A stretch of DNA of 64,000 bases. Source: Paragordius varius. Taxonomy: Eukaryota > Animalia > Nematomorpha. The stretch lies in NCBI GenBank assembly GCA_964247055.1, contig OZ176054.1, positions 1,550,001-1,614,000 of the forward strand. Direction: 5' to 3'. The translations under genes and the position numbers were made by a program. The notes beneath the pieces are model-generated. The model saw nothing but the letters and a program-made list of their open reading frames with translations, was not told the origin of the DNA and made no database searches. Positions 1 to 63,520 of the stretch are shown one piece after another (position 1 is the stretch's first letter; every line of letters starts with the position of its first letter).

Positions 1-1060
1 AATATCTACAACAATCTAAATTGGTAAAAGGATATTTAATTTTATACATTTACGCTATTATGCCAACGCATATTGCTCAATCATTCTTATTGTAAAAATG
101 CACAATTTTATACCTTATATCATTGAAATAAAATATTACATATCTCTGAATTTTTAATTTCAATCATTAATTATACTTTATATTTACTTTTAAAAGTAGA
201 AGTCCCAAATTATAGGTATTATCTAAAATATATAAATTTTAATTTTATCATAATATTTTTTCCAAATATAATCACGCAACGATGTATATTAGTGCTTTTT
301 TTAGAACATAAGTGAAACGCTTCTTCCTTTAACACTTCGATTCAAAATGAGGTATCAAAATACCCCAGACTAAATTTAAATTAAAAATTTTAAAAAAATA
401 CTGAAGGAAACGGTCCCAATTTAAATTTATGCTTCTATCCTGATAAATATTATATAAATATGCCAAAATATCTTGATAAAATTTTGTAAAAAAAAGTTCC
501 ATCTCAAACTACTTCGACGCCTTAAAATTTTCTTGCAAAAAATCGTTTTCATTTAATTTTAAGGGTAAAACTAAAGCTAATTTTTTATATAAATTACATC
601 TAACATTGATAGAAATAGATAAAGCGGTTTATTTTGTATTATTTTTTAATTTTAAAATTTAACATGTCACGTTGACGAAATTTTTACCTTTCGGTTTTAG
701 CTCAAAATAATTTATATCAAGTATTTTTGAATATTTTTTAGATATTTCGGTTTATTAATGTTATATAAGTGCAAAATTTTGCCATGGTTTCGATTCCTTC
801 CACACTTTTTAAAGTATTTGATTTTAAACAGGCCTGGGGTATCCAACTACCCCAATTTGAATCGAAGGACTAATAGTGTGGTGTATCCAAGTGTGTTAAA
901 TACGGTTTTTTTAAAAAAAACATGTGCATCAAATATTTGAATTATGAATTTGTTTAGCCAATGATAAGTCAAAGTTATCGGAATATTAAAGTTTAAATCA
1001 AATTATATACATATCCCCCCATACATGTTTTTTTTATTAAAAAACAAGTGTTCTAAAAAA
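1..1060 (+). repeat. Diverged direct copy of the MYG1 3' flank (16726-about 17240), interrupted by a MITE at 333-895
   Basis: 1-330 aligns by eye with 16726-17060 (aatatctacaacaatctaa vs aacatctacaacaatctaa, through gtgaaacgcttcttc), and 898-1060 aligns with 17061-17240. Confidence 0.85.
333..895. mobile_element. piggyBac-like MITE with TTAA target duplication
   Basis: TTAA at 329-332 and 896-899; termini CACTTCGAT and ATCCAAGTGTG; absent from the paralogous site near 17065. Confidence 0.75.
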
Positions 1061-2169: not shown

Positions 2170-4400
2170 GCTTTGTTTCTGTGACCGTCAGGCCTGACCT
2201 GGCCATTCGGTGCGTGGAGGTAGGGACTAATAGGGGTAAAGAATGTTGTAGAGTGTATTTTGCTAGTATAAATGTGGGTTCGTTAAGAAGGAAGCTATAC
2301 AAATTAGTTGAATCTGTGAGGGTAAAATGGTAAAATATTTGTGCAAGGAGACTGGATACCGTGAAAACGGCACTAAGACGTTAGAGGATAATTATAAATT
2401 GTTTTTTTTCAGGTTCTAAATATGGTTGCAGTGGCTATAATAGTGCCAAATTTGAAAATTTAATAAAGTTAAACCACTGCTGACAATAGAATTATAAGTA
2501 TTGAGGGTTTTAACCATCTTTAGCCTTTATCCCCAGATAGGAGATGAATTTTATGATTTGATGAACGGAGAAATGGCTCTATTGCCGAAAAACAGAAAAA
2601 TCATATTTTGTGGTCATTTCAATCGGCATGTGGGAGAAAAGAGAAGAGGGTTTAAGCCTTGGCTTGGCGAAAAAGGCTACGGGGTTAAATGAAAAAGGGG
2701 CTAGTTTATTAAGATTCGCTCAATCTTAAATCTTTGCTATAACAAATACCTTTTTTAGTAAAAGGGATAGCCATTTAATTACCTACGAAAGTGGAAATAA
2801 GAAGTCACAAATCGATTTTATCCTTTTACCGCGAGGGTCTTTTATGAAGAACTGCAAAGTTATCCCTAACCTCCAGATTAGAACACAAGATAATTAAATT
2901 TTTGTATAATTATATGACAGAAATACCAATAGCGGGAGAGGAGTGTAAAATGAAAGCTGGTAGAAATCAGGTGTATGGAGATGCATGACTGAAAGAAGAA
3001 AAAATAATTTTGAAATAGAAAGAAAAGTAAAGCTTATCAAATGTGGAAGTTGACCCACCAAAAAGACAAGGAACGATATAATAGGATTAATACGAAACTT
3101 GTAAGGCTTGTTACAATGGTAAAAAAGTGAATTAAAAGTTAAATAATAAGCAAGGTCCAGAAACACAGTCCAGAAAAAGCTGGAGTTGCCCTCTAATGCG
3201 ACCGCTATTAAACACAAAAACGCAAATTGATATTAATAAGAAATCGGGGTTGTTTGAGAATAGGTATCTATAAATAAAGCTGCAGGTCCAGACGATATTA
3301 ACATAAACTGTAAGAAAATATTGTCAGAAAAAGGTAATGAAGTTGTTACAGGTATGATACCATCCGAATTCTCATTTTTAAGGGTAAAGGAGGTATGAAT
3401 AATAGTAACAATTAGAGTGATTATCTTATACAATGAAATTGTTTGAGAAAGTACTAGAATAACGAATAAGAAAAAAGGTTATGATGGTATTCAATTCGGT
3501 TTCAATCCGATTAACGAAATAAGAGGGTTAATTGAAAAGCACATAGAAATGAAAAAGGGGTTGCACGGTAATCGATATTGAAAATGCGTTTGACTGGATA
3601 CGTACAATATGGTGGAGAAAACGAAAAAACGTTTCTGAATGTTATATAAAATTCTAAAAGCGTGTACGGCTCTCACCATACCAAAGTTAGAACACACCAG
3701 GGAGTGTCAGATCCTGTTAAAAATTAATAGTTTATCAGGGGGCAGCAATCAGTCCGTTGATATTTATATACATGGACGAACTTCCAAAAGAAGTGGATAT
3801 GGTAGCCGGTATTGCTCTATGTAGATGACATAATAGTGTTGTCAGGCGAGTTGCATGAGTTGAGAGAAATAGTTAAAAGGATTGATGTGTTACAAAAATG
3901 CGGATTAACGGTAAAAAGAAAAAGGAACATAAAAATTTTGGTGAAGAAAAACGAGAAATGGAATTAGAAGAAAGTTGGGTTTCAAAGGTTAGGAGTAATG
4001 CAAATATTTAAGAGCTTTAGCAGCAGATGGTTCCTTTTTATTAAAAATAGTTGGGGAAATTATAAATTTTAAATGGCATGCACGATAAAAATAATGATTT
4101 AAAGTCAAGGGTGAGATTTACAAGGCAGTTACAGGGTAAAGAGATGTAGAACTCACAGACTTGGGTATTAAAGAAAGAAGAGAGGTACTTTAAAGTTACT
4201 GAAGGGAAATGATTAGTGCGCTGTAACGGGCAAATGCATGGTTAGGAATTCATACATAGAACGAAGTAGAAATTAAACCGATAACACAGAAAGATGATGT
4301 TGAATCGGTTTGGATGGCTTGCGTAGAAAAAAGAGACGGTAATTACATTAGTGAAAAGATTGCTGATTGTATTTTGCAAGGTAAGAGGGGAAGGTGTCCA
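2170..4400 (+). mobile_element. Decayed RTE-type non-LTR retrotransposon (endonuclease + RT)
   Basis: Fragmented frames: IIFCGHFNRHVG, LAITNTFF, HLITYESGNKKSQIDFIL (APE endonuclease), KAAGPDDI and QFGF (RT); many stops and frameshifts. Confidence 0.8.
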
Positions 4401-5119
4401 AAACCTGATAAATAAATACGGTTAAGAGGATAGTAAAACTGAACCTAAAACACAACGCCAGAGACAGGGTTCTATGGTGGAATAGTTTACGGCTTGATTC
4501 GAAAGAGTGATATATAATGTAATTATTATTATTATTACTACACTAAACAACAAATTTTTCTCTCTGGAGTTTTTTTGATTTTTATCATCATTTAACATTA
4601 AATCTGAATTAAAAATTATGCTACCTAACAATTTTTAATTTGATTCTAAAAAATGTTTTCTATGAACATTATCAACAAATGTTTATTTAAAATCATTCAT
4701 TCGAAAGAGCAAAAACTCTATTAAATGCATACTAATATGTTTTGCATCGATAGTTATTATCGGAGATTAAACGCGACAAACCCGCGAACCGAGAGCGTTT
4801 TTGTCAATAAATATATTTTTAACCAATGGATGAAAATAATTAAAACTTTGTATAGATAGCATTGAATGTCTAAAAAATATAACACATAAATATATTTTTG
4901 ATAAAACCACTTATTTAATGCTGTTATGTCATTCAAAACAGTCATTTTTTGTTTTTTAAAAATTACCATCTCATCAATATTAATTATTTTCTTTTAGAAG
5001 GCTTACAATTTTAAAATTCAAAATAAAAATAAAGTTTAAGGTATTTTTGAACTTTTATATCCATTATGTATTAAGTTTACAGTTCTAAATGTGCATTATA
5101 GTATTTATTAGGTTAAATA

Positions 5120-10452: not shown

Positions 10453-10951
10453 GAAGCTGTTAATCCGATTAATAGGTTTAGCTAGTAATCATAAATAACA
10501 TAAAAATAAAAAATACCTCTCTTTATCATCACATATCCTATATCTTAAAGGGCTTTCTTGAATTTATGCAAATGTTTGTGTTTGTTAAATCAGATTAAAC
10601 GTTTGTTTTTTCTCCCACCCTATAAAAAACAGCTCATCTTCTTCTCGGATATACAAATTGGGTATAAACCTTATGAAACTTACAAAGTTGATCAATATCA
10701 GCTATTTAATAGTTATCCTAATGTTAGACTCAAAAAGTTTCAAAAATTGTAAAAAATATTAACATTTTTATCTATAAATATTTTACACGACAAAAATGTT
10801 TGATAATTAAATATTATTAAAATAACTATATATTTTACACTCTTATAGAAACTAGCCCAATGTCTCATGGCCTAAAAAAAGTTATATAAAGTATTAAAAA
10901 AATTATATTATTGAACATGCATATGCGTTTTTTTTCTTTGTTAGCCGAGGC

Positions 10952-13900
10952 ATGTATCATCACTTAAAAAAAATTGGAACCCACGATGGTAAGTTTCATT
11001 GCGATGAAGTCTTGGCATGTTCTATGTTAACAATTTTATATGAATATCGAAATTATGCAATATTTAGGTTTTTTTAAATTAATTTTAGGACAAGAAAAGG
11101 GGGTATTTTAGATATATGTCACATCGTTGTTGATGTTGGAGCTGAGTATAATTATGCAAATAAACGATTTGACCATCACCAAAAGTAAAAAAAATTTGTA
11201 AAATATAGAACCTTTTCTCTTACAATGGCTGATATTAATGATAAATTGAAGGATTATGATAGTATACGATTAAGTAGCGCTGGTTTAATATACGGACACT
11301 ATGGTGAAAAAGTGATTTCTTCTATTTTACCAAGCCTATCCGATCCGGAATCGTTAAATTATGTATATCAGAATGTTTACGAAAATTTTGTGCAAGAAAT
11401 TGATGCCATTGATAATGGGGTGGAGGTTTGTGAAGACAATAAAAAGTTTTTATGTCAAACTCATTTATTAGTATATATAATATATATGTTGATTGGTAGC
11501 ATAATATACGTCAATTTTAGAAAATTTTCGTATGCACCAAAATGTTTTGACTTTATTCAAAGATTGAAGGATATTATTTTTTTAAAATATGTTGAAAATA
11601 TCAAGCTTACCTAAAAGACTATTTTATCAACTATGTCAGTTTATAATATACTTTAAGAATTTTTTCATCTAATTATTTATTATCTTTAATTGAGTAATGG
11701 CCAACAACGTTCTATCTCCACCTCCCCGCGCTGTTGGCTGGGCCCTAAAAATGCGCTAACGGCAAAGGCCAGTTTTTAATGATCTGTAAAATCATTAGTT
11801 GCACACAACGACATGTGTCACGTAAAATCGCTTTGAACCATGAACTATGAATATGAATTACTTCGGGGTAGGAAAACTCCGAATATGAAATCCTGATAGT
11901 ACATATCATTACTTGAATTTAATCCATTAAAATTATATAAATTTGGTTTAATTGCTTTTTAACATTAACATAATTATTTTTTCTTGAATAAGAATAAATT
12001 ATGTTAATTGAAAGAGGTAGCATTAAATAGTTTACTCTTGAAGTGTATGTTATATAAACTCCTTGCTCTTTTTAAATATGCTTTTTTTAAATACCTGATA
12101 CCTTTTTATAGATATTAATATTAGGTGAATATATCAAATTTGAACCTCGCCTGATACCGTAAAACATATTTTAATGCAAATTTTTATTATGTCTTTTGAT
12201 CATGTTCTGATATGAAAAGTAACATAATTTTTACATTATAATATAACACGGTGCGCAGCCAAAAATAAAGGTTATGGTGCTATATACCGTTGATATCAAA
12301 TTTTCTCCAGATTATGAATATGAAAATCTTTTTGTGCGTAAAAATCTTTGAGAAAAAATTATTTGGTTTTCATTAATTGAAATATCTAGAGATAATTCCA
12401 GAAAAATCTAAAATATTCCAATAAATTATTGCATACCATATTAAGTATAATTATTTTAAGATCAACCCTTTCTAAAGTTTCGAAAGCTCTTAATCTCTTA
12501 ATTTTTATGGTAAATATGTAGTCGAATTAGCCATATGATTTAATAAATATAAAAAATATACTCTATTGAAAAAACTGGCACGTACTTCATTTAGGTTTTT
12601 AAAATATATATTTTAAATACAATTTCTTTTAATAATATCTTAAATTCATAAAATTAATTTAAAATTTTTTACTTTTTACAAGTAACATGAAAAGGGTGGG
12701 TAAATCAATAATTCGTATAAACAAGTGTTGGATTTTATTAATTTACATGACCAATATCCATTGATCGATTATATGGATATATCATATTTAAATAATATTA
12801 GGTTTTGACTATTTGTTGGAGGATATCTTTGATATCCTTTTAAAGGCAGAGAAAGTCAATCCCATTATAGCGATAAGGGAATCTACCATAGGAGTATGCT
12901 TAGACAACTCAGCCTTGATTACAATGGAGATGATGATTGTACCAGCATTGCACATCAAACGGGGTTTAATTTTCCCACCTTCATAATTATTTTAAAAAGA
13001 AGGATGCGTATGAACATTATATGCAAAAGTTTTGCAAATTTACCTGCAAATCAGACAATAGCTACCTAAAGGGTTCCCAAATATTTACACATTATCTCAC
13101 GCTTTTTAAGCAAGACGCAATATTGATGTGCAGGTTTTTAGGCATCAAATAATCTGTTAATGTCGCTGAAATTTTAAAGAAAGTAGTTTGTTTTCGACAA
13201 AGAATATGAAAATAATCACATAAAATTATTTACTGGAATAATTATTTTATAATATTTATTTGCTCATAACAAATCAATTTGTTTGCATATATATATAATA
13301 TATATATAGGTATGTTTGAAAAATTTTTCTTTTAATATTGTACTAAACGTAGATATGCCCAAGGTGTAAGTTTTTTTTGCTAATTGTTTATGATTGGAAT
13401 CCATAAAATATGTATTAGATACATATTTTTCATATATTTACTTATAATGCAATAAAAATACCAATCATATCAATACAAGGAACAATAAATGTAAAGTGCT
13501 AAAAAGTTAATTCTGTATATATATGATTTTATCTTATTAAATGGATATCGATATAACAAAGTAAAATATGACGCATGTATTTCCCCTATATTAAACATGT
13601 AATAATATTTGATTGTTTTCTTGGGATATAAGTGTTTAAATAGATTTCCACCTAAAATTTGTATATGCAAAGTTTTGCCTAGATTTTATTGCATTTCTCG
13701 CTCAAAATGAGATTATTAATTTTAGTTGGTCTTTGTTAAATTTATTAAATGTTCAAATCATCATCCAAAAATAAAACTTAGCAAAAGTTTTACTTGAAAT
13801 ATTTCATTGGAATTTCTAAGTAAAATTACTCATATAATATTAACTGGCCTAATCTTGTGTTCCGAATGCTATTTCTTTTCTACTTGATAGTTTTGGATCG

Positions 13901-16727
13901 TATACATAGGTGATAATAAATTGAGCAGAACATCATGTCAATTTGTAAATTTTAAATTAAATTTTAAAAATTATATAGATTTTACTTGAAATTATATTTT
14001 AAAATATATTTTTTTTTAAATTATGTATTTATGTGAGCATACTTTTTGATATATATTAAATTATGGCTAATTCGACTTCTACCTATTTTTCATTTGAATT
14101 AGAACAATTAGAGTTTAACTTTAAAAAAGGTTTATGTTATAGAAAATAATTATACTTATGTTTGTATAAATATAAATTATATTGGTCAGATGTTCTGGAT
14201 TTTTTCTAGAGTCTCCAAATACCCTAAATAATGAAAATCAAAATAACTTTTTTTAATATTTTTACCCATAAAGATATTTTGATATTCATAATCTGGAGAA
14301 AATTTGCCATCAAATGATATATAGCACCGTATAACCTTTATTTTTAACCTCTTTTTGCCGCACAGTGTCATGATATATAATCATTAAACATGCAAAATAT
14401 GCAAAAAAAGTATAGAATATAAATGCGTTAATATTTAATTTCATATAATTTCCATCACCGAAAAATATATGAAATTTAATATTTATTAATAACATTTTTT
14501 AATGCAAACACTCTTTAAAATTTTTAATTATTATATTTAAATAATTAACTTCGAAACAATTTATGCTTATTTGAATAAACCTCTTTATTGTTTGATTAAT
14601 ATTCATAAAAAATAGAAAACTTTTGTTTTATTATCAAAGCTTACAAAATAGTTAATGGGCAAAACTATAAGTTTTTTTTAAAACAAATTGCATACACAGA
14701 TATTTCATAACCACAAATCTTAGCGCCAGAGTGGGACGCCTAAATCCGCCTTGGAATACTAATAAGCTTGATCCAAACGTAATCTTTATATATATATATA
14801 TATAAATTTCTATTTGTGAGAGTATAATTGAGTTGAATCTCTTTCCTCTCAAATTAACTTTACCGTTTATAAAATTTAAACTGTTTTAACACTTTTTTTA
14901 AATTTTGTAATTGTAATTAAAATATTAAAAATTATAAAACTCGTTTAATTGATTAATAGAGATAAAAAATGTTTACATATTATATGATAAATTCAAACAT
15001 CATCCACACCATTTTCAAATATTTTAAATTATATTTCATAATCTTTTAAAAAACATTTAAGTACTAAAATCAAAAATTGAATACACATTTATTTAGCATC
15101 ATAGTCGTTATCATTTGTTCAAATTTTCCATAGAAAAAAAATTTTTTTTTTGTTAATGCCAATCAAAACGTTGTCAAAATATCTGAATTTAACATATGAT
15201 ATTATATTTCTGCAATTCTTTGACTGAAGGGTTTTAAAAGGCAAGTGACTGCATTTATGAGTTGTCATGTTTTTTTTTCATTTTTTAAACTTTATAAATA
15301 TAACCTTATATTTGTATTTATATGTATAGGCGCAATTCTCAAAAGCCATGGATCTAGTTAAAAAAGAATTTATCGATTGTGTCAAACACTATGCCCTAGT
15401 TAAATGGCCCGCCCTAGTCATTTTAAAAAAAGCAATGTTAGCTAGATTGCAAGTATGATAAATACAAGAACACGGTTTTAAAATTATTTTTTTTGGTAAA
15501 TTTTAATAACCATTTAAGTCCGTTATGTAGCGGAGCAGAATATATTACAAAAAAGGAGATGTTTAATTGAAAAATACAAGCTCCATTACATCGATGTCCT
15601 TAAATCCGATATATTAAGAAAAATGTTTATTTTACTATTAGAGAATATTTAAAGTTCTTAATTCAATGCCCAGTAATATATGATCAAGATTTATTTTATA
15701 GAAGATATATTTTTTACCAAACAGATTATAATCTCGTTTTAATGCATTATCATATGATTTGTCAAAATAGGAATTAATGATTTCCTAATATTACAAATAT
15801 CAACAAATATCACAATAGATTGGTTTGAAATTAATTACATAGATATGAATCATTTATTGAATGTAACAATATATTTTTATTTATTGGCCAAATCACCTTT
15901 GATGAGCTAGTAGCTTATATCAGAATTGATACGTGATCAGTAAAAATATTGCTAAATCCATTAAACCCATATAGTCGAGAAATTATATCACACTTCATCA
16001 ATATTAAGGCTTTTGAAAATGCCCTTTTCATAGTATATCCAAAATTTTGGTCAATTTATATTTGAGAAAATGTGAATAATAATATGTTTAGTGGGATCCC
16101 AGTGGTCAGATTTTATTGTTGGATCAAATGATCCCTTGGGAAGATTTGATTTATGAAGTTGAGAAAAGTATGGAACTAACATCCAAACACAATACAATCA
16201 AATTTGTCATTCAAAAAAACGTTTTATCCAATGATTATAGCATTGAAAGTGTTCCGATTGGAAAGGGCTCTTTGATAAATAGGTTAGTATTTTATATGAC
16301 AAAAATATATTTTTTCCGTAAATTTTATTTAACACAACTATAAGATTTTAGCTGTTTTTATTCAATAACACTTTATCATTCAAATTCAACACTTAATTAG
16401 CTATAATTTTATTTTAAAAATAATTTTTAATATGATAACATTAATTGAAGTTTTTTTATTGATTTTAAAATTTAATTTATCAAGGATAAGTATGTTGATT
16501 TCGGTGTAAGAAAATTTAAATTATCGACTGAAAAAAGGTATACCTTATTAAATTTTAGGATACCCTTACCAAAAGCTTGGTGTGGTTTGCGCGACTCAGA
16601 GTTGTCAAGTGTAAGTGGAATTCCTGAATGCACATTCGTTCACATTAATGGTTTCATAGGGGGGAATAAATCTAAAGAAGGTGCTTTGGAAATGGCTAAA
16701 AAAGCCATTCTCCAAGCTTCAAATTAA
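10952..16727 (+). CDS. MYG1: MYG1 (UPF0160) 3'-5' exonuclease, 7 exons, 336 aa
   Basis: Exons 10952-11067, 11089-11184, 11209-11445, 14700-14778, 15330-15452, 16092-16282 and 16559-16727 total 1011 nt; all introns are GT-AG and phases are consistent. The translation has the family motifs IGTHDGKFHCDE, IVVDVG, RFDHHQ, LSSAGLIY, YENFVQEIDAIDNG, TTNLSARVGRLNPPWN, KAMDLV, WDPSGQI, PLPKAWCGLRD and FVHINGFIGG. The start ATG at 10952 is the first in-frame ATG and is less certain. Confidence 0.93.
11068..11088 (+). other. 21-nt spliceosomal micro-intron (MYG1 intron 1)
   Basis: GTTTTTTTAAATTAATTTTAG. Removal joins ..AIF-R-TRKGG.., matching the conserved ..IVRTRD..; retention gives AGG TTT TTT TAA (stop). 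Confidence 0.8.
11185..11208 (+). other. 24-nt spliceosomal micro-intron (MYG1 intron 2)
   Basis: GTAAAAAAAATTTGTAAAATATAG. Removal joins DHHQ-K-TFSLTM, matching the conserved DHHQRSFTETM; retention gives AAG TAA (stop). Confidence 0.8.
12247..14367 (+). mobile_element. Decayed Chapaev3 (CMC)-like DNA transposon in MYG1 intron 3
   Basis: About 90-bp imperfect TIRs, 5'-CACGGTG..CACAGTG-3', flanked by TAA/TCA (a TWA-type 3-bp TSD with one mismatch). Broken frames GGY..YP (about 12820) and IVPALHIKRGL (about 12935) resemble the Chapaev3 motifs GGYTKYPC and LLPPLHIKLGL. Confidence 0.6.
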
Positions 16728-17467
16728 CATCTACAACAATCTAATTAGTAAACGGATATTTAATTGTATGCATTTACGCTGTTATACTAACCCATATTGC
16801 TCAATTATTCTTGTTATAAAAACGCACAATTTTGTACCTTATATCATTGAAATAAAATTTTAGATATTTCTGAATTCTGAATTTCAATAATTGACCAAAC
16901 TTTATGTCTTTTTAAAAAAAAGGATGTACCAAATTATAGGTATCATCTAAAAAAATATAAATTTTAATTTTATCATAATATTTTTTCCAAATATAATCAC
17001 GCAACGATGAGTTAGTTATATTACTGCTTTTTTCTTAGAACATAAGTGAAACGCTTCTTCAACCTTAAAATACGGATTTTTTAAAAAAAACGTGTGCATG
17101 AAATATTTGAATTATGAATTTGTTTAGCCAAAACTAAAACTTTTTTACAAATAAATCGATAAGTCTATAAAAAGTCAAAGTTATGGGAATATTAAAATAG
17201 TTTTTTAAATCAAATTATATACACGCTTTTTATTTTAAACATGCGTGCTGAAAGTATGTATGAAAAGTAGGAGGAGATTTACTATACTACTTTTTTTATA
17301 ATGATTTCAACTTTATTTTTGTTTTAAAAGATGATTTAAAACATAACTCTTTTTGGTGACATTTAATTTTTGTATATCATTGTTTGGCATTCGATAACGC
17401 ATCTATAGCATATTTTAAAAATGATAAATTGTTTTCGAAATTAATATAAAATGTACTGTATTTTCTA

Positions 17468-19181
17468 ATATCATTACAGTCATGTAGACTTTATATTGTT
17501 AAAGTTACTTTTTTTCGTTAATTGGGTATTAATATTTGGTAAAGAAGCTATATGGTATTATCATATCTAATTCTTTAAAAAAGTAAAAAGAAGGGGAAGG
17601 GCGTCGGAAATCTTTGGTAAAAAATGAAAATACACTAACTACTAACCCTTCACTTAACTTTGATGGATATTTTGTAATGTTAAATTTTGAGAATATTATA
17701 GCAATTTATGTTAACATTTGAAATAATTTTGTTACGTATTTAGATGCGGAATTTTGTGGGTTTTTATCTTTAATAATTTAATAAATAGTAAAATGGGTAT
17801 TTTATTAATTATGATAAATTTAATAATTACTTTCAACATGATAAATACCTGTATCAATCAATATTGGTATTATTTTATATAGTTGTTATTAGTAATTAAA
17901 ATACAGGTTATATATTTGTTAAAATTTAACTAGATTTTGGATTGTTTTTGTTTTTATGTTATTCATTGTCAATTTTTATGTATTGACATTTTGATCAGGT
18001 AAAAATTGCGGTTTTTAAATTTAGTCAAATTTAATTTTTTTTGTTTTTTATTTAACATTGTTAATTGTAATTAATTACATATTGTGATTTTAATAATTGC
18101 AGGTGAATATTGTGGTTTTTAATAAATTTACTTAAATTGAATTTTTTTGTTTATTGTAATTAATTACTACATATTGGAAATTTAAAGAAAACAGGTAAAA
18201 ATGGCGGTTTTTTTTATTGTTGATTGTAATTAATTACATATTGTGGACATTTTAATAATTACAGGTAAATATTGCATTTTTTTAATAAATTTAATAAAAA
18301 TTGAGTTTTTGTTTTTTAGGATTTGCATTGTTAATTGTAATTAATTTATTTGGTAATTTTAATTACAGGTAAAAATTGCGGTTTTTAATAAATTTCAAAT
18401 TTATTTTTTTTTATTTTGTATCATTGTTAATTGTAATTACTAAATATTTGATAATTAATAACAAATAACAATGATACAAAAAAATTAAATTTGAAATTTG
18501 TTAAAAACCACCATTTTTACCTGTATTTTTTGAAATTTACAAATATGTAGTAATTAATTACAATTAACAATGTTAAATAAAAAACAAAAATTAAATTTGA
18601 CTAAATTTAAACCGCAATTTTTACCTGATCAAAATGTCAATACATAAAAATTGACAATGAATAACATAAAAACAAAAACAATCCAAAATCTACTTAAATT
18701 TTAACAAATATATAACCTGTATTTTAATAACTAATAACAACTATATAAAATAATACCAATATCGATTAATACAGGTATTTATCATGTTGAAAAATATTAA
18801 TTATTAAATTTAATTATTAATCTTAAATAATAAAATACCCATTTTACTATTTATTAAATTATTAAAGATACCCACAAAATTCCGCATCTAAATACGTAAC
18901 AACAATATTTCAAATGTTAACATAAATTGCTATAATATTCTCAAAATTTAACATTACAAAATATCCATCAAATTTAAGTGAAGGGTTGGTAGTTAGTGTA
19001 TTTTCATTTTTTTACGAATGATTTCCGACGCCCTTCCCCTTCTTTTAACTTTTTTAAAGAATATGATATGGTAATACCATATAGCTCTTGTTTTTATATT
19101 CTTTACCAAATATTTATACCCAATTAACGAAAAAAAGTAAATCTTTAACAATATAAAGTCTACATGACTGTAAGTCGATAT
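17468..19181. mobile_element. Foldback-like element: 1.7-kb inverted repeat with internal about 100-bp tandem units
   Basis: 17468-18430 is the reverse complement of 18465-19181 (e.g. ttacagtcatgtagac vs gtctacatgactgtaa; aaggggaagggcgtcggaaat vs atttccgacgcccttcccctt). The CAGGT-headed unit occurs about 5 times in the left arm and about 2 times in the right. Confidence 0.85.
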
Positions 19182-19259: not shown

Positions 19260-20355
19260 GTACCCAGACGATTAATTTCACCAGGTGCCAATTAATCTCT
19301 CATAAAATGACAAACACACATAATTGAGTTCGACAAAAACTAGCGTTTTATTCTTATCATCCAGTAATTATGTCGAATTTTATGCCTGAAGCTAGAACGT
19401 TTGCGGCATGTATTGCTATCAGAAAAAAAGCTGTAGAGAGTTCTCGTTTGCTGTTACAAACATATGGTTAACATGTTCGGTCGATTAACACATGTGGAAC
19501 ATGGTTTCCAAATATTAAAAGTTGTGATTTCATGTGAAAGACTGTGGGCGCTCTGGTAAACCACACAAATGTGCAGAAGCTAAAGGAAAGAGTTATCGAA
19601 TGATGACCCAACACTTAATCACAAGCCTTACAAATATCACATAAAACAATAATCGACGCCCGAGAACAAAGGAAATGAATGATATATAAACTCGCTAAAT
19701 GGATCGTACACAATTTGAATGAACGTCAAATCAAAAACTGCAAAGTAACTGGTTAAATCTTGCTTTAACGTCATTGAATATAATGTTGGATGAGGAGTGG
19801 CTTTAATTTGTAGATTTAAGCCAAAAAATCGTAGCTTTTACCTTGACAAACCTGTCAACGTCAAGGCCAATTCGCTTTGGCATGGCAAGAATACCATCTA
19901 TGTCTGGCTTTACCAGAGATAGTGTTTTATGAACTTTTTAGTTCGGTAAAACCGCTAATACATAACGCTATATCCAACAAACGGCTTTAACCATGGATTA
20001 ATAGAAAAATTACCGGAATGGTCAGAGGACATGGAAAAGTTACAGCGAAACCAATGAAAAACACCTTGAAATCGCTTCCATAGAAAATTATTTTGCATCC
20101 CCTGTACTATCCTGATTTGGTGCCATCTGAGTATTATCTTTTTGCATCGATGTGCTTACCCTGGCAGAACAGGACTTCAATAAATTTGAAGACGTAAAAA
20201 AATGACTTGACTAATGGTTTGCCTCAAAATACAATCAGTTTTTTTGGCACTTCATTCATATATTACAGGAGAGATGCGCGAAACGGATAAAAGCCGATGG
20301 ACAATATTTATAAAATATATGGGTTCCTTGACGTGTTTAAAAAAACACCTAGTTA
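19260..20355 (+). mobile_element. Decayed mariner (Tc1/mariner) transposase
   Basis: HPLYYPDLVPSEYYLFASM at about 20095-20155 corresponds to the mariner motif HPPYSPDLAPSDYHLF; frames are fragmented. Boundaries are approximate. Confidence 0.75.
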
Positions 20356-26946: not shown

Positions 26947-28321
26947 ATGACAACTACACTTGTTTGGAGTAATGTGCCATCAGCTGGTATATTACCTTTG
27001 GAAACTAAATCGATTTCCAACACACTGCTAAATACTCCCGCACCTGGTATCATTGAACCGGTGGACCTAACTAGCAATATATACGTTAAGATTGGATTTT
27101 CCCTTATTTATCTCATTATTTTTGTGGTTGCCGTGGTAGGGAACTCCCTAGTACTCTTCATAGTTTCCCGGAATTCATCGATGCAAACGCCCACAAATCT
27201 TTTTATCGCCAATCTCGCCGTTTCAGATCTCATGCTCAGTTTTCTATCCGTTCCATTTACGCCCATATCATCATTCTTGGGTTCTTGGGTTTTCGGCAAG
27301 ATTATGTGCCACATTGTCCCAATGGTACAGGGTTGTGGAGTCTACATCTCCACCCTAACACTTTCTGCCATTGCGTTGGATCGGTACGAGGTTATGTTTA
27401 AACCATTTGCTCCAAAGAAAACTAAGACACGCTGTTTCTACATCATACTTGGTATTTGGACCATGAGTTTGACCGTCGTGGCTCCTTATGCCGTATTCAT
27501 GGAGCACACAAGGGATCCTGATAACCCCAAGGCTTGGTATTGCAATGAAAATTGGCCACCTCGATTTGATAAGTTTTACTCGTACGCTTTTTTGGTCCTT
27601 CAATATTTTTTACCGCTGTGCGTTATAGCTTATTGTTATATCCGTGTATCGGCCAAAATAACTGAACGTGTCGAGTCGAAATCACGGGGACTCCTGACAA
27701 ATCTCAAACGAGAAAGGGAGGAACTAAAACGCAAGGATAGAACGAATCGTATGTTAATATCTATGGTGGCCGTTTTTGCCTTTTGCTGGTTACCCCTTAA
27801 TCTTATTCACGTTATAAAAGATGTTTATACCAAAATACTAAATTGGCCATACTTTATCGTCATCTTTTTTACGTGTCACACCATAGCTATGAGTTCAATA
27901 TGTTATAATCCGCTCATTTATGCTTGGATGAATGATAACTTCCGCAAAGAATTTAAGGCAGTCTTGCCATGTTTTAGGAACCATCGTGCGAACGGGAGTT
28001 CGGCCACCCTACCCATAACCAATGAAAAGCGAAAAGCCACAAAACTAACTAAGAGTAAAACTGTCATTGATCGCAACACAAAATTACCAGGGCAGCAGGA
28101 TAACCAGAGACAGAAATATCATATAACGTTTTACGATACTATACATAAGAAAAAATTATCGATACCCATATTGACTAAAAAGGCGGAAAGTATCAGGTCA
28201 TCCTCTACAAAATACACAGCAATTCGATCAGAAAAACTTGTCAAAGATAAATTATCAGAGCACAAGGCAGCGAATGCGTGTCAAACCGTGAGTGACCAAA
28301 CAACATTTATAAAATTCGACG
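26947..28321 (+). CDS. Class A neuropeptide GPCR, NPY/PrRP/sNPF receptor-like; main exon holding all 7 TM helices
   Basis: ORF track 26947-28473. Motifs: GN (TM1), NLAVSD (TM2), ALDRY, CNENWP (ECL2), FCWLPLN (TM6), MSSICYNPLIYAWMNDNFRKEF (TM7/H8). An in-frame TAA at 26914-26916 makes 26947 the first ATG. A phase-1 donor (G/gtataa) lies at 28322, after which the ORF becomes intron-like. Confidence 0.93.
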
Positions 28322-29505
28322 GTATAAACTTAGATGTTTCCAATCGTACGGCCATTAACCATAAACAATTAACAAGTATTTTTTTGTTTATTATTAAGTT
28401 TATAATAAAATTAGGAATTTATCAAATCTTTGTTAAGGGCATTTCAGGCCAATATAAATTTTTCTTTTTTTAAAAAATATTATTGACAAGCATATTTGAC
28501 TAGTTTTTGATACGTTAATAATTATGACATTGAAGGACTCTGAATATATTTTTTTTGAAAACTTATCTATATTCATAAAATTAACTTTCCAAATCTTTCT
28601 ACTTATTCTACATTAATTGTAACTTAACTATCTTAATGTTTATCATATCTATTATGTCTTTATTTGAATAGGTAGCACTTTCTGTGAATATCAATTTTTG
28701 ATAAAAGTAATAATAATTTAATATATATATTTTAAAGATGAAGAGTTTATGTCAGGAGTTATTGTGATGATGATAATAAAATTTGTAATAAAAATCTTTA
28801 CGACACTGAATAATAAAATTTTACTAATTTGGGATTATTAAATTAAATTCTACGAGAGTTTTTTGAGAATAATATGAAACGATGATAAATGTATATAAAA
28901 TATATTTATTAACATTTTTATTATATTATATCTAATATGATTAACTTAGTTCGACAATTTAAGTATGTATCAAGTGAAATTTGGTATTCATATTATAACC
29001 ATATGTGCTATTGACTTTATTTTTGAAATCTAACGCTTAATATGTAAATAAAAATATTTCTTCAAGTCTTTGCCTTTTAATAAGTGTCGCTGGTCTCAGT
29101 GAACTTTTTGAAAAAGGGTTTCGGTTCTTTTATTTTTTGGGTAGTTTTGTTTTATCTTCCAGTTTGCATATAAACCACAAAAAATACGCTTACTATAAGC
29201 CACACGAGTTTCTCTGCTTTTCTATGCTATGAAAATGTATAATTGATTAATAAAATAGAAAACAGTGTTAATATATAACTGTATTAAAAACAGTTACAAT
29301 TGTTTTTTGGGCATTGTTTTTAGTTATAAAACGGCATTTTTTTGTAAAACTTGTGTTTGTTCTGTCTGTAACAATTTCAGCAAAAACAATATTACCTTTC
29401 TTTAACCTCAGTCTTTTTCCTTTGACGAAAACGAAACTAAAAATTTTAAACATAGATTAATCTATAATAACTCTACTTTTATTAGTAAATAATGTTTAAA
29501 TATTA

Positions 29506-29537
<32 letters not shown>

Positions 29538-32288
29538 TTAATTTGTATAAACGGTTGTTTATCAAGTTAATTTATTTGTTAAAATGTAATAATATTATTA
29601 AAATATAAACAAAAATCACCATTTCCTACATTTTATAATTTTGTACCTTTAGTTTTCGAAATTCAAATTTAGCAAAAAGGAATCGCTAACATTTACCATT
29701 CTTAATCAAAATAATATTTTATAATCTCAGTTTAATGTCAAAACTTGCGATATAAACCAAATTTTATCTGATAATTTTGTTTCGTTTATTTGTTATTACT
29801 CCATTTATAAGGAGTCTTTTATTTTATCCCTCAAAACAACCCCTTCATATATATAAGATAAATTATCTTGTTTTGGTTTTATACATAAAATACTTTGTGA
29901 TATTTACAGGCAATAAACCTATAAATGTCAACTTAGATCAGGGGTGTCCAACATGCGGGCCGCCAAAATTTTGAAAATCCATAATTTGTGCTCAAAACAC
30001 CTTTGACATTTCTTAAACAAAATTTCAGAATAGATCTATCCGATTGACAGCGAGCTTGAGAAAGTTGTTATACCATGTTTGGATTTCATAGTTTATGTTT
30101 GGAATATAATATAAATATATATATATATTTATGCCCATATATTGGATACCCCTCTTAAGCATATTTTAATCCTATCCAAAGTTGATATTCTCTTCTTTTA
30201 TTAATAAAATAATTAATTAATTATATATAATTCCTCTCTAAACACAATGGATTACCTAATTATTATACAATAACTATGCAATTTACAAAAATTGATTTAT
30301 TTCATATTTATGATGGTGGTGATAAGCCAATAATTTTGATTTATGGATATATCATACATTATTATTGTAGAACGAGGGAGGGAGGGACGGACCAACCATA
30401 TCCACATATATGGGATGGTGATAAGGTTGTCATCTAAAAACTAATTTATATCGCTGTACAGCTAGTTCTGTTTTTATTTCATAGGTATTAGCAAATGTTA
30501 GTTAGACTGCAATTTGTTTAAGGTTTACTAAAGATTTTGGCAGTATTTTTACTTTAATTTCTCTTTCCTATGAATAATTTATGCATGAAAAGGTGTGAAA
30601 AGCATAAAGTATAATAAATAAATCTATTTATTTTGTAAATTTTTAGCATGAAAAAAAAATTAAATCCAATAATCCATATATATCACAACGTATCTAATAG
30701 AAATTTTTTCAACCTAATCTGGCAATTTTTGGATGTTACTGCTAATGACAAAAATTAACATTACTGTATCCTTTTCATAAAACATCGATTTAAAAGTTTT
30801 TTGAAATAGTTTCTATAGCAATAAAAATTTATTATAACACAAGAATGCCTAAAATTGGTGGTCCCAAAAAATTTTTAGTTTTGGTGCTTAGAAGAGTATT
30901 TTTAGATATTTAAACCATATTTAGCCATTATAAGGTTATTGTGAGCCATACAGGGGGTAAAAATTAAGAATTTTGCTCATGAAATTTGTGAGGCATCAAA
31001 TATGCAAAAACAAAGGATATTTTTAAAGACACAACGATATTTCATAATTGGTTAAAAAAGATTTTTTACATATGATGATATAAAAAATTAATTTTTTCTT
31101 AGCCCCACAGGGATTTGTTATTAATATTAAAAAATTTTAAGAACAAATTGAAAAGCATGATTCAAATTGCCGAATTGATGATGTAATGTGGCGCCAGATT
31201 TTCCAACAATACTATATAATGGGTTAAAAAAACTTTCGACTGTTTAAAGTATAAACTTCCACTTTCACTTAATTTTAATAATATATGAAATTTAATAGCC
31301 ATTTTAACAGAGATTGCATCTTTTTAGCGAATAGAAATTTATGTGTCGCATCAATTTTAATATAAAGATATATGTCTAATAAATTTGATTTAAAGTTGTC
31401 TAATAAAATTTTGACACTTATACTATTAAATAATCTAATATAAAAAACTATTCAATTGAGAGCAGGTATTCAACAATATAGTTTAAATATCATATAAGGG
31501 TTGATTAGGTGATATATTGTAATATATTTAATAATTTACTTCTTTGACCCCTATATATGTTTCGTAAAAAAATAAAATCCATAAAAATATTCCTAAAAAA
31601 TATTTTAACAAGGTTTGGTTATCATTCATCACCACAAAAATAATAGAGTCAGTGTGAATCTCTTTTTATCTAATAAATAAAAAAAATAATATACTTTTCA
31701 AAAAATGGCTTGAGTGGTATTCTTTAGTTAGATATATATGATTAAATTTTAAATTTATTTTTTAACTGTTATAACTAGAAATGTTTTTGAGCCTAATAAT
31801 ATTTTGTGAAAGGGGAATAGACTCTACTTGATCTTTGGCATCATATGAATTTTTTTTATCAACCATGTTTCATTTAAAGATTTATTATATACATATGCCT
31901 TTGAAAAATATTAAATTTATAGTTGAAAAAGGATACTAAGGATGTTGGCCTCATTTAAGAGACCAATGTATTAAGACATTACAATACAATGTTTTTTGGC
32001 AAAAATAAATTAATTTAAAAGAATATTGTGTTTGTGTGATACATGGACTAGCTATATTAAGATCAAAGAAAAATATTTCTAGTATTATTCAATTCAATTA
32101 AATTTTACAAACTTGAGTTAATCTAATTAAATGGTTGTGTTACATGAAATACTACTTGATATGTTTAGTGATAGTTTCAAAAATTTAATCAATTTTAGCG
32201 GTAAAAACTTTGTTCAATCTTCAATTACAACTTAAAACGTTTACGATAATAAAAATTTTAAGTTTGTATTTTTTATAATACAATATAG

Positions 32289-32635
32289 CAGCTGATAGCA
32301 TCAATGAGAAAAACACAAAAAATGTTTTAAGTTTTACAAGCTCTCCTCAAACTTCTGATTTTCAACGTATACCTCTATTAAATAATGATGCATTTGTACC
32401 CTCAAACGAAAATTCGTCGTTTACATTTATTCCAGAACAATATCAAAAAAGTAAACTTCAATCGCCAACAAAAGAGATAACTAATGAAGTTGAAACAAAT
32501 TTTTTTGAATCGCCAACAGAACTGGGTAACCTAACCCAAAGCCAAAGTCTTGATGAACAATATATTTTACCTGGAAACGCTAATCGGCTCCATCATAATC
32601 AAGTACATTACACGGGATATGAGATTGTTCTTTAA
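32289..32635 (+). CDS. Probable terminal coding exon of the GPCR (C-tail extension, about 115 aa)
   Basis: ATG-less open frame (AADSINEKNTK...ESPTELGNL...YEIVL*) after the acceptor caatatag at 32287-88, in phase 1, matching the 28322 donor; the spliced product would be 573 aa. The link between the exons is inferred. Confidence 0.6.
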
Positions 32636-49452: not shown

Positions 49453-50100
49453 CCATATGGTTTTCCAGAAACCGGAGTAAAAATTAAAATTTTAGTTCTA
49501 TGTCTCTCGTGCTGACAACACCAATACACTTGGGTGGAAAAGCAAGGAGGGGAACAAAAAATATTTTTCATAAATTAGCAGATAATCTTAATCAAAACAT
49601 TATTGGCGCTGGGTGTGCACATATATTACACAACGCTATTCAAACAGCTGCTGATTTAATATCCCTAGATATGGAAAATGTAGTTGTTAAAATACATTCT
49701 TATTTTTATATATACACGGTACGCGTTGAAACGCTTAAGGAATCCTGTGAAAATGCAGAAGTTTATTATCAAAAAATGCTTGGATATTGTAAAACCGTTG
49801 GTTAGCTGTTCTGCCAGCTATTGAAAGTAAAAATGTATGATCCTTTAAAATCCTATTTTTTATCACAGGACAAATGTCCTATTCTAAAAGTTTTTTGAAA
49901 GTGATTCTTCAAAAATATAGTTATTCCTACATAATCAAGCTTCTCTCTTTCAAAATGTTATTGATAGAAGGTGACAAAATTTGAAAAAGCGGGACAAATC
50001 TGAGAAAGGGGGGGGGGGACATGAGGGGTACAACCAAAAAATTTTAAGCAAAAAATTTATTGTAGTATTTATTTATTTTTAACACAAATCTATATATTTA

Positions 50101-50660
50101 TAAAAATGGAAAGTGGTGGCTTGATTTATTTCCGGAAAACCGGTGGACCCATTCAAATCCAAATGTCGAAAAAATATAATCATTAATGAATGCCCCAACA
50201 ATAGCTTCACCCTTTTTTGAATTTGGTCCCCGGTTCGGGCCCACCTCGTGTAAAAAACGGTTTTTTAAAAACACAAGTCCACAAAAATCGTGTCTTCGAG
50301 ACAATTTTCCGAATATGATTTTTTTACCTATTTTCGATCGCGCCAAAAATTTAACTTAGTGCTTTTTCCATATAGGCCTATGGGTAGGGGTCTACCGGTT
50401 TAAAACTGAAATGTCATAAAAAATTGGCGTGCCTTTGGAGCTAATTTTCAAATTAAGAAGCCATACGAGTTCTATAAAGGCTTTAAATATTACCAATAAA
50501 AACTAATTATAAGCTGTTTTTTCCGTTAGCCGTCAATTTGGGACCTTTACACCAGTAAACAATGTATTAGTATGAATGCACCGTTTTGAAAATCCTATAA
50601 GATCATAGCTATTAAATAATGTTTCGAAATAATCCACATATATGGATCATTTTATTGATC
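50101..50660 (+). repeat. Interspersed repeat family, copy 2 of 3
   Basis: Colinear with 48951-49452, including the end aataatccacatatg..gatcattttattg. Confidence 0.75.
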
Positions 50661-51552
50661 CCCTCTTCTCCCAAAAAACTTTTCTAAAGTTGTAGGACAT
50701 TTGTCATGTGATAAAAAATATCATACATTTTTAAAATTCTTTCGATAGATGGCAGAAGAGCTAACCAACGAAAGCATTTTTTGATATTGAACTTGAACTT
50801 TCGCATTTTCACAGAATTCCTTGAGCATTTCAACGCGTACCGTGTATAAAAAATAGGAATATATTTTAACAATTACATTTTGAACATATAGGTCAACAAA
50901 TCAGCTCTTTGAATAGCGTTGTGTATTATATGCGCTGCACACCAAGCCAATAATGCTTTAATGAAGATTATCGCTAATTTATGAAAAATATTTTTTGTTC
51001 CCCTCCTTGCTTTTTCATCGAAGTTCGTATTGGTGTCAGCGCAATATGCGATGATTTTGTCTTTTAAATTATTTTTTTTCTATGAAGTAAAAATTTGTCG
51101 GAATTTTTACCCGCTAGAGAAATAAAATCTAAAATTTTAATTTTTACTCCGGTTTCTGGATCAAAATATCTTATTAAAGTAAATAATTTTGTTTCGTTTT
51201 GATTTGATGGATCAGAATATAGAGATATGAAATTAATTTTCAGAAAATCTTTTTGTATTTCAGAACACGCATGTGGCGAAAAGACATTGCATACAATGGC
51301 TTCAGCCTTTGTACGGGCACATGTAAATTTTTTACTGAATAAGGTACGATTAACCTGTGAGGTACAATCCATAGATCTAAAGGGATGATTGTGATTAACG
51401 GCGTGAAAAGATAAAACGCCTTCGGCTAGTGCCAAATTCTTTTCTACATCTCCAAAAGCAACTTTTCGATAAAAATCGCTCATTTTGTAAAATGATGCCG
51501 CCAAATCTAAACATTCTATGTTTTTATGTTTCCATATGTTTTGTTATATCAT

Positions 51553-62449: not shown

Positions 62450-63520
62450 AGTTGTTGTTGTTGTTGAGCTTGTAATCGGTTATCGACCATTAGCGATTTT
62501 GTAGGAAAACTTCCTCCATTCGGTTCTGTCGTGAGCTTTTTGAGATAGTTTTTGCAGTGACAATTTGGAAAGAAGATTCTTCTACCCAGCGAATACGTCT
62601 GCGTCCTCTTCCTCTCTTACCATTAACTTTTCCTAACCTAATATCCTTTTCCAAATTGCCCCGAATAATGTGTCCAAAGTAACCGAATTTTCGTTTTATT
62701 ATTTTACCCCGAAGCGTTGTTTGTGCATTAATTTTATTTACAATGTCGATGTTCTTTATTTTGTCCTTCCATGTTATACCAAGTATTTTTCTCCAGCAAA
62801 ACATTTCAAAAGCGTTTATTTTTTTTCGTCTTCAATTTTGATAGTCCAGCTTCATCCGTATAACATGATAGGAAATATTAATGCGTTTATTAGGCGGATT
62901 TTTTTAAGGGTTATGTCATGAGATTTCCATATCTTGTAGTGTGAGGCTAGAGCGCATTTGGCGATAGCTAGTCTTCTTATTTCTTGGGAACTGGAGCTTG
63001 AGTTGTTGATGATGCTTCCAAGGTATGTGTATTCGTTGACTACTTGAATTGTTTCGTTAATAATCCGAAGCGAGTCATAGGAATGAGGGGAGTTTATATG
63101 CAATATTTTAGTTTTGTTGAGGTATAATGTAAGATTGTATTTTTTGCACACATTTATGAAAGTTTGGAGACTGTTTTCGAGGTTTGTTTGTGAATTTGCT
63201 AAGATAACCGTGTCGTCTCCGTAGTGGAGAGTCGTCAGAGGACCCCCTACTTTTATTCCTGGCAGATTTAGATCCCTCATGATACATTCCAAATATATGT
63301 TGAACAACATGGGGGATAAAATGCAGCCTTTACGCAGACCTATGTTCATTGGACTCCAAGAGGTCGGGCCATGCGGGGTGTTAAGTGATAGTAGGAGTTG
63401 GAGTATATGGATTTAATTAGTTTGATTAAGTGATCGGAACTATTTGTTTATGGGCCTTCCAGAGAATGTCATGTTGAACGGTACCGATAGGCCACATATA
63501 GATACGACATCGAACAATTT
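62450..63520 (-). mobile_element. 5'-truncated RTE-type LINE (RT) with a (CAA)n 3' tail
   Basis: GLRKGCILSPMLFNIY, LHYGDD, VNEYTYLGS, FCWRKILGITWKDKIKN, GKRGRGR; a (ttg)n tract at 62452-62466 on + is the tail. It lies upstream of the traced kinase exons, probably in a kinase intron. Confidence 0.85.

What the first reader, a model, noticed from the sequence alone, without database searches (positions are those of the whole stretch)
11068..11208. Two ultra-short (21 and 24 nt) GT-AG introns in an otherwise intact animal MYG1 gene
Seen: the conserved MYG1 N-terminus can only be read by removing GTTTTTTTAAATTAATTTTAG (21 nt) and GTAAAAAAAATTTGTAAAATATAG (24 nt). Both are 3n and both place an in-frame TAA if retained. 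The 1011-nt CDS is otherwise uninterrupted, and the next shortest introns traced in the window are 56, 57, 65 and 67 nt. Established: introns near 20-25 nt are known from ciliates, chlorarachniophyte nucleomorphs, microsporidia and dicyemids, are below the length normally spliced in most animals, and 3n introns tend to carry stops so that retention is visible to NMD. Inference: this TE-rich, non-miniaturised genome may run a distinct micro-intron class alongside ordinary and kb-long introns in the same gene, which would imply an unusually compact spliceosome footprint.
Basis: partly seen in the sequence, partly recalled or inferred. Interest (0 to 1): 0.85.

Follow-up and report, generated by a model that had tools for sequence, protein, structure and literature searches.

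The report
Two tiny introns in hairworm MYG1
An ordinary, intact RNA-trimming enzyme gene (MYG1) in what is most likely a horsehair worm can only be read if two pieces of just 21 and 24 bases are spliced out, exactly where other animals have introns of 40 to 8,000 bases; a 2026 survey found introns this short in only two animal groups, but no RNA could be examined here.

Summary
Observation confirmed. The segments 11068-11088 (21 nt) and 11185-11208 (24 nt) are GT..AG. Each gives an in-frame TAA if kept; removing them yields a 7-exon, 1011-nt, stop-free MYG1. They are almost certainly old introns shrunk in place. Spider, bee, ant and brine shrimp have phase-2 introns at both sites around the same 96-nt exon; fluke and sea urchin share the second site. 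None of 95 homologues has an insertion there, and the exon between them carries the catalytic DHH. The host groups with the horsehair worm Gordionus (100/100, one gene). The other 22 introns traced are 57-3254 nt. The NMD argument is not supported: base composition alone puts a stop in about 60% of such introns. A special compact spliceosome is untested. The scan has noted 20-32 nt introns many times on other DNA of this genome, and an unchecked note reports a neighbouring MYG1 copy with 25 and 24 nt introns. Verdict: new member (probable third animal lineage) of a known kind.

The parts
10952..11067 (+). MYG1 coding exon 1 (116 nt; first in-frame ATG; THDG.FHCDE metal-binding motif)
   Evidence: Pfam PF03690 positions 1-31, E 6e-10
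11068..11088 (+). Micro-intron 1, 21 nt, GT..AG, phase 2; in-frame TAA at 11075-11077 if retained
   Evidence: same site and phase in spider, bee, ant, brine shrimp
11079..11083 (+). TTAAT, candidate branch site; putative branch A at 11082 (-7 from the 3' end, 15-nt lariat loop)
   Evidence: motif scan; function inferred
11089..11184 (+). MYG1 exon 2 (96 nt) with DVG and the catalytic DHH motif
   Evidence: profile 34-64, E 3e-9; 12 of 67 conserved columns fall in aa 39-71; 96 nt also in four arthropods
11185..11208 (+). Micro-intron 2, 24 nt, GT..AG, phase 2; TAA at 11186-11188 is part of the GTAA donor; A-run 11200-11203 is the candidate branch region
   Evidence: same site and phase in fluke, spider, bee, ant, sea urchin, brine shrimp
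11209..11445 (+). MYG1 exon 3 (237 nt)
11446..14699 (+). Intron 3, 3254 nt, phase 2, donor GTTTTT like micro-intron 1
14700..14778 (+). MYG1 exon 4 (79 nt)
15330..15452 (+). MYG1 exon 5 (123 nt)
16092..16282 (+). MYG1 exon 6 (191 nt)
16559..16727 (+). MYG1 exon 7 (169 nt), ends in TAA
16726..17060 (+). Post-stop flank, duplicated at window 1-326 (86%): probable tail of a tandem MYG1 copy just before the window
   Evidence: lead s1-379407

Best explanation
Both segments are ancestral U2-type spliceosomal introns of MYG1 that shrank in place to 21 and 24 nt in a horsehair-worm lineage, and they are removed from most transcripts. Shown: GT..AG ends; position and phase shared with other animals; removal restores the family's motif spacing; retention or exon-2 skipping destroys the enzyme. 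Inferred: the major spliceosome uses the GT donor, an adenosine 6-9 nt from the 3' end as branch point (TTAAT in intron 1, an A-run in intron 2) and the terminal TAG, with almost no pyrimidine tract, making a lariat loop of about 15-19 nt. The intron looks too short for U1 and U2/SF3b to sit side by side (my own knowledge of footprints). So recognition is probably sequential or helped by the 96-nt exon, as proposed for ciliate and myxozoan tiny introns. The stops are a by-product of AT-richness and the GTAA donor.
For: Intact 1011-nt CDS. Pfam register runs straight across junction 1: residue 37 = profile 31, exon 2 starts at profile 34. Site 1 holds introns of 83, 182, 2010, 5301 nt in bee, ant, spider, Artemia; site 2 holds 40, 285, 1666, 6203, 6763, 8177 nt in fluke, ant, bee, spider, Artemia, sea urchin. 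Five of the six window introns match the spider gene to the column and phase, the sixth to within one column in a variable stretch. 0 of 95 homologues have an insertion at either junction; spliced HCDE-to-DVG spacing 38 is the mode (57 of 85), retained would be 45 (1 of 85). 63 of 67 conserved columns kept. GTTTTT donors are also used by the 1102- and 3254-nt introns, and 22 of 22 long introns are GT-AG with weak donors. Precedent: 22-27 nt median introns in myxobolids and Dicyema; 15-16 nt in Stentor.
Against: No nematomorph MYG1 orthologue or transcript was found. Intron 2 has no YURAY motif. Both introns hold homopolymers (T7, A8), so their lengths could be off by a base or two. A probable second copy of the gene lies next door, so this copy could be dispensable.
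Confidence: 0.8

Rival explanations
1. The introns are spliced poorly or in a regulated way, and their in-frame stops are selected so that retained transcripts go to nonsense-mediated decay.
For: Both are 3n with in-frame TAA. In ciliates short 3n introns are depleted and enriched in stops (PMC5014332). Very short microsporidian introns splice at about 25% median efficiency (cited in PMC13644364).
Against: Stops are expected with p 0.59 and 0.63 by composition; 41% of the window's long-intron donors give a phase-2 stop by themselves. Two 3n introns is a 1-in-9 event. An unchecked note gives the paralogue a 25-nt first intron. Two introns cannot show selection.
Confidence: 0.08
2. This copy is a silent or decaying duplicate whose introns eroded below spliceable length, while the neighbouring copy does the work.
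For: Window 1-326 repeats the post-stop flank at 86% and a note places another MYG1 about 4 kb before the window. Four usually conserved residues differ: W201K, V208L, H236L, F278L.
Against: All 12 splice ends and the whole frame are intact. Neutral decay at half the flank divergence would leave no nonsense change with p 0.025 and no frameshift with p 1.3e-4 (rough, from one 338-nt flank, and blind to very recent loss).
Confidence: 0.05
3. Assembly or consensus error collapsed longer introns.
For: T7 and A8 homopolymers in the segments; reads could not be checked.
Against: Errors would have to remove tens of bases twice while keeping GT, AG, phase and a clean 1011-nt frame that itself holds seven A-runs of 6-8 nt. 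Many unchecked notes report 20-32 nt introns on other pieces of this genome.
Confidence: 0.04
4. The segments are removed or bypassed without the spliceosome (IRE1/tRNA-ligase-type cutting, or stop read-through giving 7- and 8-residue insertions).
For: Lengths resemble the IRE1-cut XBP1 intron (23-26 nt, my own knowledge; short non-spliceosomal introns are discussed in PMC5435141).
Against: No stable structure around either segment (z -0.72 and -0.40; the segments alone are unfolded). Neither segment contains a C, which argues against the CNG/CNGN loop motif (sequence). The ends are GT..AG at spliceosomal intron sites of other animals. TAA ends MYG1 itself and does not occur inside the long coding frames traced.
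Confidence: 0.03

Closest known systems
Ultra-short introns of myxobolid myxozoans (Henneguya, Thelohanellus, Myxobolus; PMC13644364)
   Same: GT-AG introns under 30 nt at conserved positions in conserved genes; donor reduced to about GTa; A residues near the AG as likely branch site; parasitic animal.
   Different: There the genome-wide median is 22-27 nt in compact genomes, with long-read RNA support. Here 2 of 24 traced introns are tiny, the rest are 57-3254 nt, the DNA is repeat-rich, the host is an ecdysozoan, and RNA is lacking.
Dicyemid introns (Dicyema; PMC6543705)
   Same: Median 27 nt, about two thirds under 30 nt; bilaterian parasite; the cited survey title reports a conservative exon/intron structure.
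   Different: Spiralian with a reduced genome and most introns tiny; here tiny introns are a minority in this window and share a gene with a 3.2-kb intron.
Ciliate tiny introns (Paramecium about 25 nt, Stentor 15-16 nt; PMC5014332, PMC9505925)
   Same: AT-rich GT-AG introns with the branch A about 6 nt from the 3' end and a very tight lariat.
   Different: Unicellular, with nearly all introns tiny; the 3n/stop bias is shown statistically there and not here.
MYG1 3'-5' RNA exonuclease, DHH family (Pfam PF03690; PMC6582341)
   Same: Full-length match, DHH and the other conserved motifs kept, 45-50% identical to the best animal and unnamed homologues.
   Different: No N-terminal targeting extension in the traced model; probably tandemly duplicated.

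Membership tests
U2-type spliceosomal intron | GT at the 5' end and AG at the 3' end | tested here: met
   the only donor/acceptor pairs nearby that restore the homologous protein
U2-type spliceosomal intron | Removal restores a conserved open reading frame | tested here: met
U2-type spliceosomal intron | Position and phase shared with introns of orthologous genes | tested here: met
   site 1 in four arthropods (sea urchin 10 nt upstream, fluke none); site 2 in all six species
U2-type spliceosomal intron | Branch-point adenosine near the 3' end | tested here: inconclusive
   TTAAT at -7 in intron 1; none in intron 2; 14 of the 22 longer introns also lack the motif
U2-type spliceosomal intron | Absent from mature mRNA; excised as a lariat | not testable with these tools
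Animal ultra-short intron lineages (myxobolids, dicyemids) | Introns under 30 nt at conserved sites | tested here: met
   21 and 24 nt
Animal ultra-short intron lineages (myxobolids, dicyemids) | Genome-wide median intron length under 30 nt | tested here: inconclusive
   Window sample only: 2 of 24 under 30 nt, median about 170 nt; not genome-wide
U12-type (minor) intron | RTATCCTT donor and CCTTAAC branch site | tested here: not met
   donors are GTTTTTTT and GTAAAAAA and neither segment has a C; consensus from my own knowledge
IRE1- or tRNA-type non-spliceosomal intron | Paired stem-loops or bulge-helix-bulge at both cut sites | tested here: not met
   folding no better than shuffles
NMD-selected 3n introns (ciliate pattern) | More in-frame stops than composition predicts | tested here: inconclusive
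   both stops together expected with p about 0.37; n = 2
MYG1 exonuclease (PF03690) | Profile match over the full length with DHH motif | tested here: met
Nematomorpha (host) | Groups with a nematomorph in a protein tree | tested here: met
   GPCR 67-68% to Gordionus vs at most 53% to others; sister 100/100. One gene, long branches, no nematode or priapulid rows; species not identified

The most novel reading that the evidence does not exclude
This horsehair-worm lineage keeps a separate 20-30 nt intron class, with a length gap above it, inside a repeat-rich genome that also splices kilobase introns in the same transcript. One animal spliceosome would then handle both extremes through lineage-specific changes (for example in branching factors, SF3b or U2AF). 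That would uncouple minimal intron size from genome compaction.
Probability: 0.35. Interest if true: 0.8.

Novelty: new member of a known kind. Interest (0 to 1): 0.55.

Why it matters
A September 2026 survey of 51 animal genomes found introns under 30 nt only in myxobolids and dicyemids and predicted more cases among parasites (PMC13644364). This would be a third lineage and the first ecdysozoan one in the papers I could search. It sits in repeat-rich DNA with long introns in the same gene, which argues that genome compaction is not required. It gives a natural test of the smallest intron an animal spliceosome can handle. It also warns that aligners and gene finders with a minimum intron length above about 20-25 nt may truncate or miss genes in horsehair worms.

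Tried and rejected
The joined (spliced) MYG1 model was never sent to a search tool; searches were exon by exon, by reference. The joined model was used only inside scripts, against sequences already fetched. No nematomorph MYG1 turned up in three protein searches or in metagenome contigs; these blanks say little, given the length and ranking limits. The Gordionus locus around the orthologous GPCR (L001, 37 kb) holds no MYG1. Exact look-ups of the exon-3 ORF and the GPCR ORF found nothing. Rfam: nothing in the window. Paper searches found no report of short introns in Nematomorpha; the Gordionus genome paper and a comparative preprint do not mention introns. I could not check whether a nematomorph was among the 51 genomes of PMC13644364. 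Rejected: one 141-nt intron skipping exon 2 (in frame, but it deletes DVG and DHH); a start at Met75 (same loss); TAA as a sense codon; U12-type or IRE1-type removal; selection for stops. One search was a frame slip, corrected.

Full report
Observation. The two quoted segments lie at 11068-11088 (21 nt) and 11185-11208 (24 nt). Both start GT and end TAG. Read through, each gives an in-frame TAA; removed, the frame continues as MYG1. The whole gene has seven coding exons (10952-11067, 11089-11184, 11209-11445, 14700-14778, 15330-15452, 16092-16282, 16559-16727), 1011 nt, 336 aa, no internal stop, with introns of 21, 24, 3254, 551, 639 and 276 nt. Five exons were scanned apart against Pfam and each matches PF03690 in order; exon 1 residue 37 is profile position 31 and exon 2 begins at 34, leaving exactly the two residues at the junction. 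I traced two more genes on the minus strand, a STE20-type kinase and an ADAMTS-like protease, both stop-free when joined.

Are they introns? Short GT..AG stretches are everywhere in this DNA (about 1400 per strand), so the case rests on homology. I fetched MYG1 loci of six other animals and derived their introns by exact protein-to-genome matching. At site 1 (phase 2, in the Arg codon of 'IVR/TR'), bee has 83 nt, ant 182, spider 2010 and brine shrimp 5301. At site 2 (phase 2, right after DHHQ), fluke has 40 nt, ant 285, bee 1666, spider 6203, brine shrimp 6763 and sea urchin 8177. The exon between is 96 nt in the window and in all four arthropods. Sea urchin has its intron 10 nt upstream of site 1 and the fluke has none there. 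The spider gene shares five window introns to the column and the sixth to within one column. Among 95 full-length homologues none has an insertion at either junction. The spliced spacing between the HCDE and DVG motifs (38) is the commonest one (57 of 85); retention would give 45. The chance that insertions at two fixed sites both have GT and AG ends is about 1.6e-6. Skipping exon 2 as one 141-nt intron keeps the frame but removes the DHH motif, whose mutation inactivates human MYG1. So a working protein needs both tiny introns cut.

Is the gene alive? It keeps 63 of 67 columns that are 90% conserved in the family (others: 49-67, median 66). Window 1-326 matches the flank that starts at MYG1's stop codon at 86%, cut off by the window edge. 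An unchecked note from the adjacent window reports a MYG1 with 25- and 24-nt introns about 4 kb before the window start. I could see only the flank, not that copy. If this copy had drifted freely since the duplication at half the flank's divergence, it would have stayed free of nonsense changes with p 0.025 and free of frameshifts with p 1.3e-4. This is rough and cannot exclude very recent silencing.

Host. The window is about 26% GC. Its neuropeptide-receptor gene is 67-68% identical to a Gordionus protein over the membrane domain, against at most 53% to others, and groups with it at 100/100. The path between them is long (0.9), so this is another horsehair worm, not Gordionus montsenyensis. 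This rests on one gene. Published nematomorph genomes are 200-300 Mb and repeat-rich; Gordionus is 288 Mb, 27% GC, 64% masked. No nematomorph MYG1 could be retrieved.

Mechanism. Shown: canonical ends, ancestral position, need for removal. Donors in this window are weak in general (third base A in 17 of 22 long introns, little beyond that), and GTTTTT also opens the 1102- and 3254-nt introns, so the micro-intron donors are normal for this genome. Intron 1 has TTAAT with an A at -7; intron 2 has only an A-run at -9 to -6. This matches the weak A stretch before the AG described for myxozoan and dicyemid tiny introns and the branch A at position 10 of 15 in Stentor. Inferred: the major spliceosome makes a lariat loop of about 15-19 nt, probably binding the two ends in turn or with help from the 96-nt exon. 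Neither segment folds, and neither has U12 or IRE1 signals. Whether spliceosomal proteins are altered was not testable; the window has no snRNA.

The NMD idea. The ciliate pattern is real, but here a phase-2 intron of this composition holds a stop with p 0.59 (21 nt) or 0.63 (24 nt), and intron 2's stop is simply the TAA in its GTAA donor. These two introns give no evidence of selection for stops.

Known cases and novelty. PMC13644364 (September 2026) shows introns under 30 nt in myxobolid myxozoans and dicyemids, finds no other case among 51 animals, and expects more (dicyemids). My paper searches found no such report for Nematomorpha. This scan has noted 20-32 nt introns many times on other DNA of this genome, each time without RNA; those notes are leads and I did not test them. 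The finding is a new member of a known kind, with the twist that tiny and kilobase introns share a gene in repeat-rich DNA.

Noticed in passing
window 1-326, 898-961, 966-1011 vs 16726-17060, 17068-17131, 17172-17223: Colinear duplication (85-95%) starting at the MYG1 stop codon and cut by the window edge; fits a tandem MYG1 copy just before the window (note s1-379407).
   Followed up: partly
window 16538-16558 (+): Inside MYG1 intron 6, an inner AAG/GT sits 21 nt before the acceptor, at the end of an open frame from 16476 that runs in frame into exon 7. Could be a nested 21-nt intron or recursive site, or chance.
   Followed up: no
window 10928-10949 (+): Strong pyrimidine tract and AG (10943-10944; second AG 10948-10949) just before the MYG1 ATG. 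May be the acceptor for an untraced upstream exon (other animals have a phase-1 intron before this region) or a trans-splice site.
   Followed up: no
window 61231-61212 (-): A 20-nt GT..AG segment between two ATGs, upstream of the kinase exons; possible third micro-intron, with no homology support.
   Followed up: partly
window 60135-57414 (-): STE20-type kinase, 8 exons traced, stop-free, introns 65-1102 nt.
   Followed up: partly
window 42498-37131 (-): ADAMTS-like metalloprotease (HELGH motif), 12 exons traced, introns 57-870 nt; more exons likely on both sides.
   Followed up: partly
window 26947-28470 and 32279-32632 (+): Short-neuropeptide-F/PrRP-type receptor. A second exon about 4 kb downstream ends like the Gordionus protein, which also has one long intron near its C-terminus (15.4 kb).
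   Followed up: partly
window 17474-19173: Foldback-type element: 730-bp inverted arms at 89% with internal tandem units.
   Followed up: no
window about 2200-4500, 19360-20320, 49488-51543, 62493-63412: Decayed transposon remains, judged by eye: LINE-like, mariner-like, hAT-like and LINE-like. Not run against a library.
   Followed up: no
L004 522-874; L006 12543-14024: The fluke Calicophoron has 38-44 nt introns in MYG1; sea urchin's intron lies 10 nt upstream of the arthropod/hairworm site 1.
   Followed up: no
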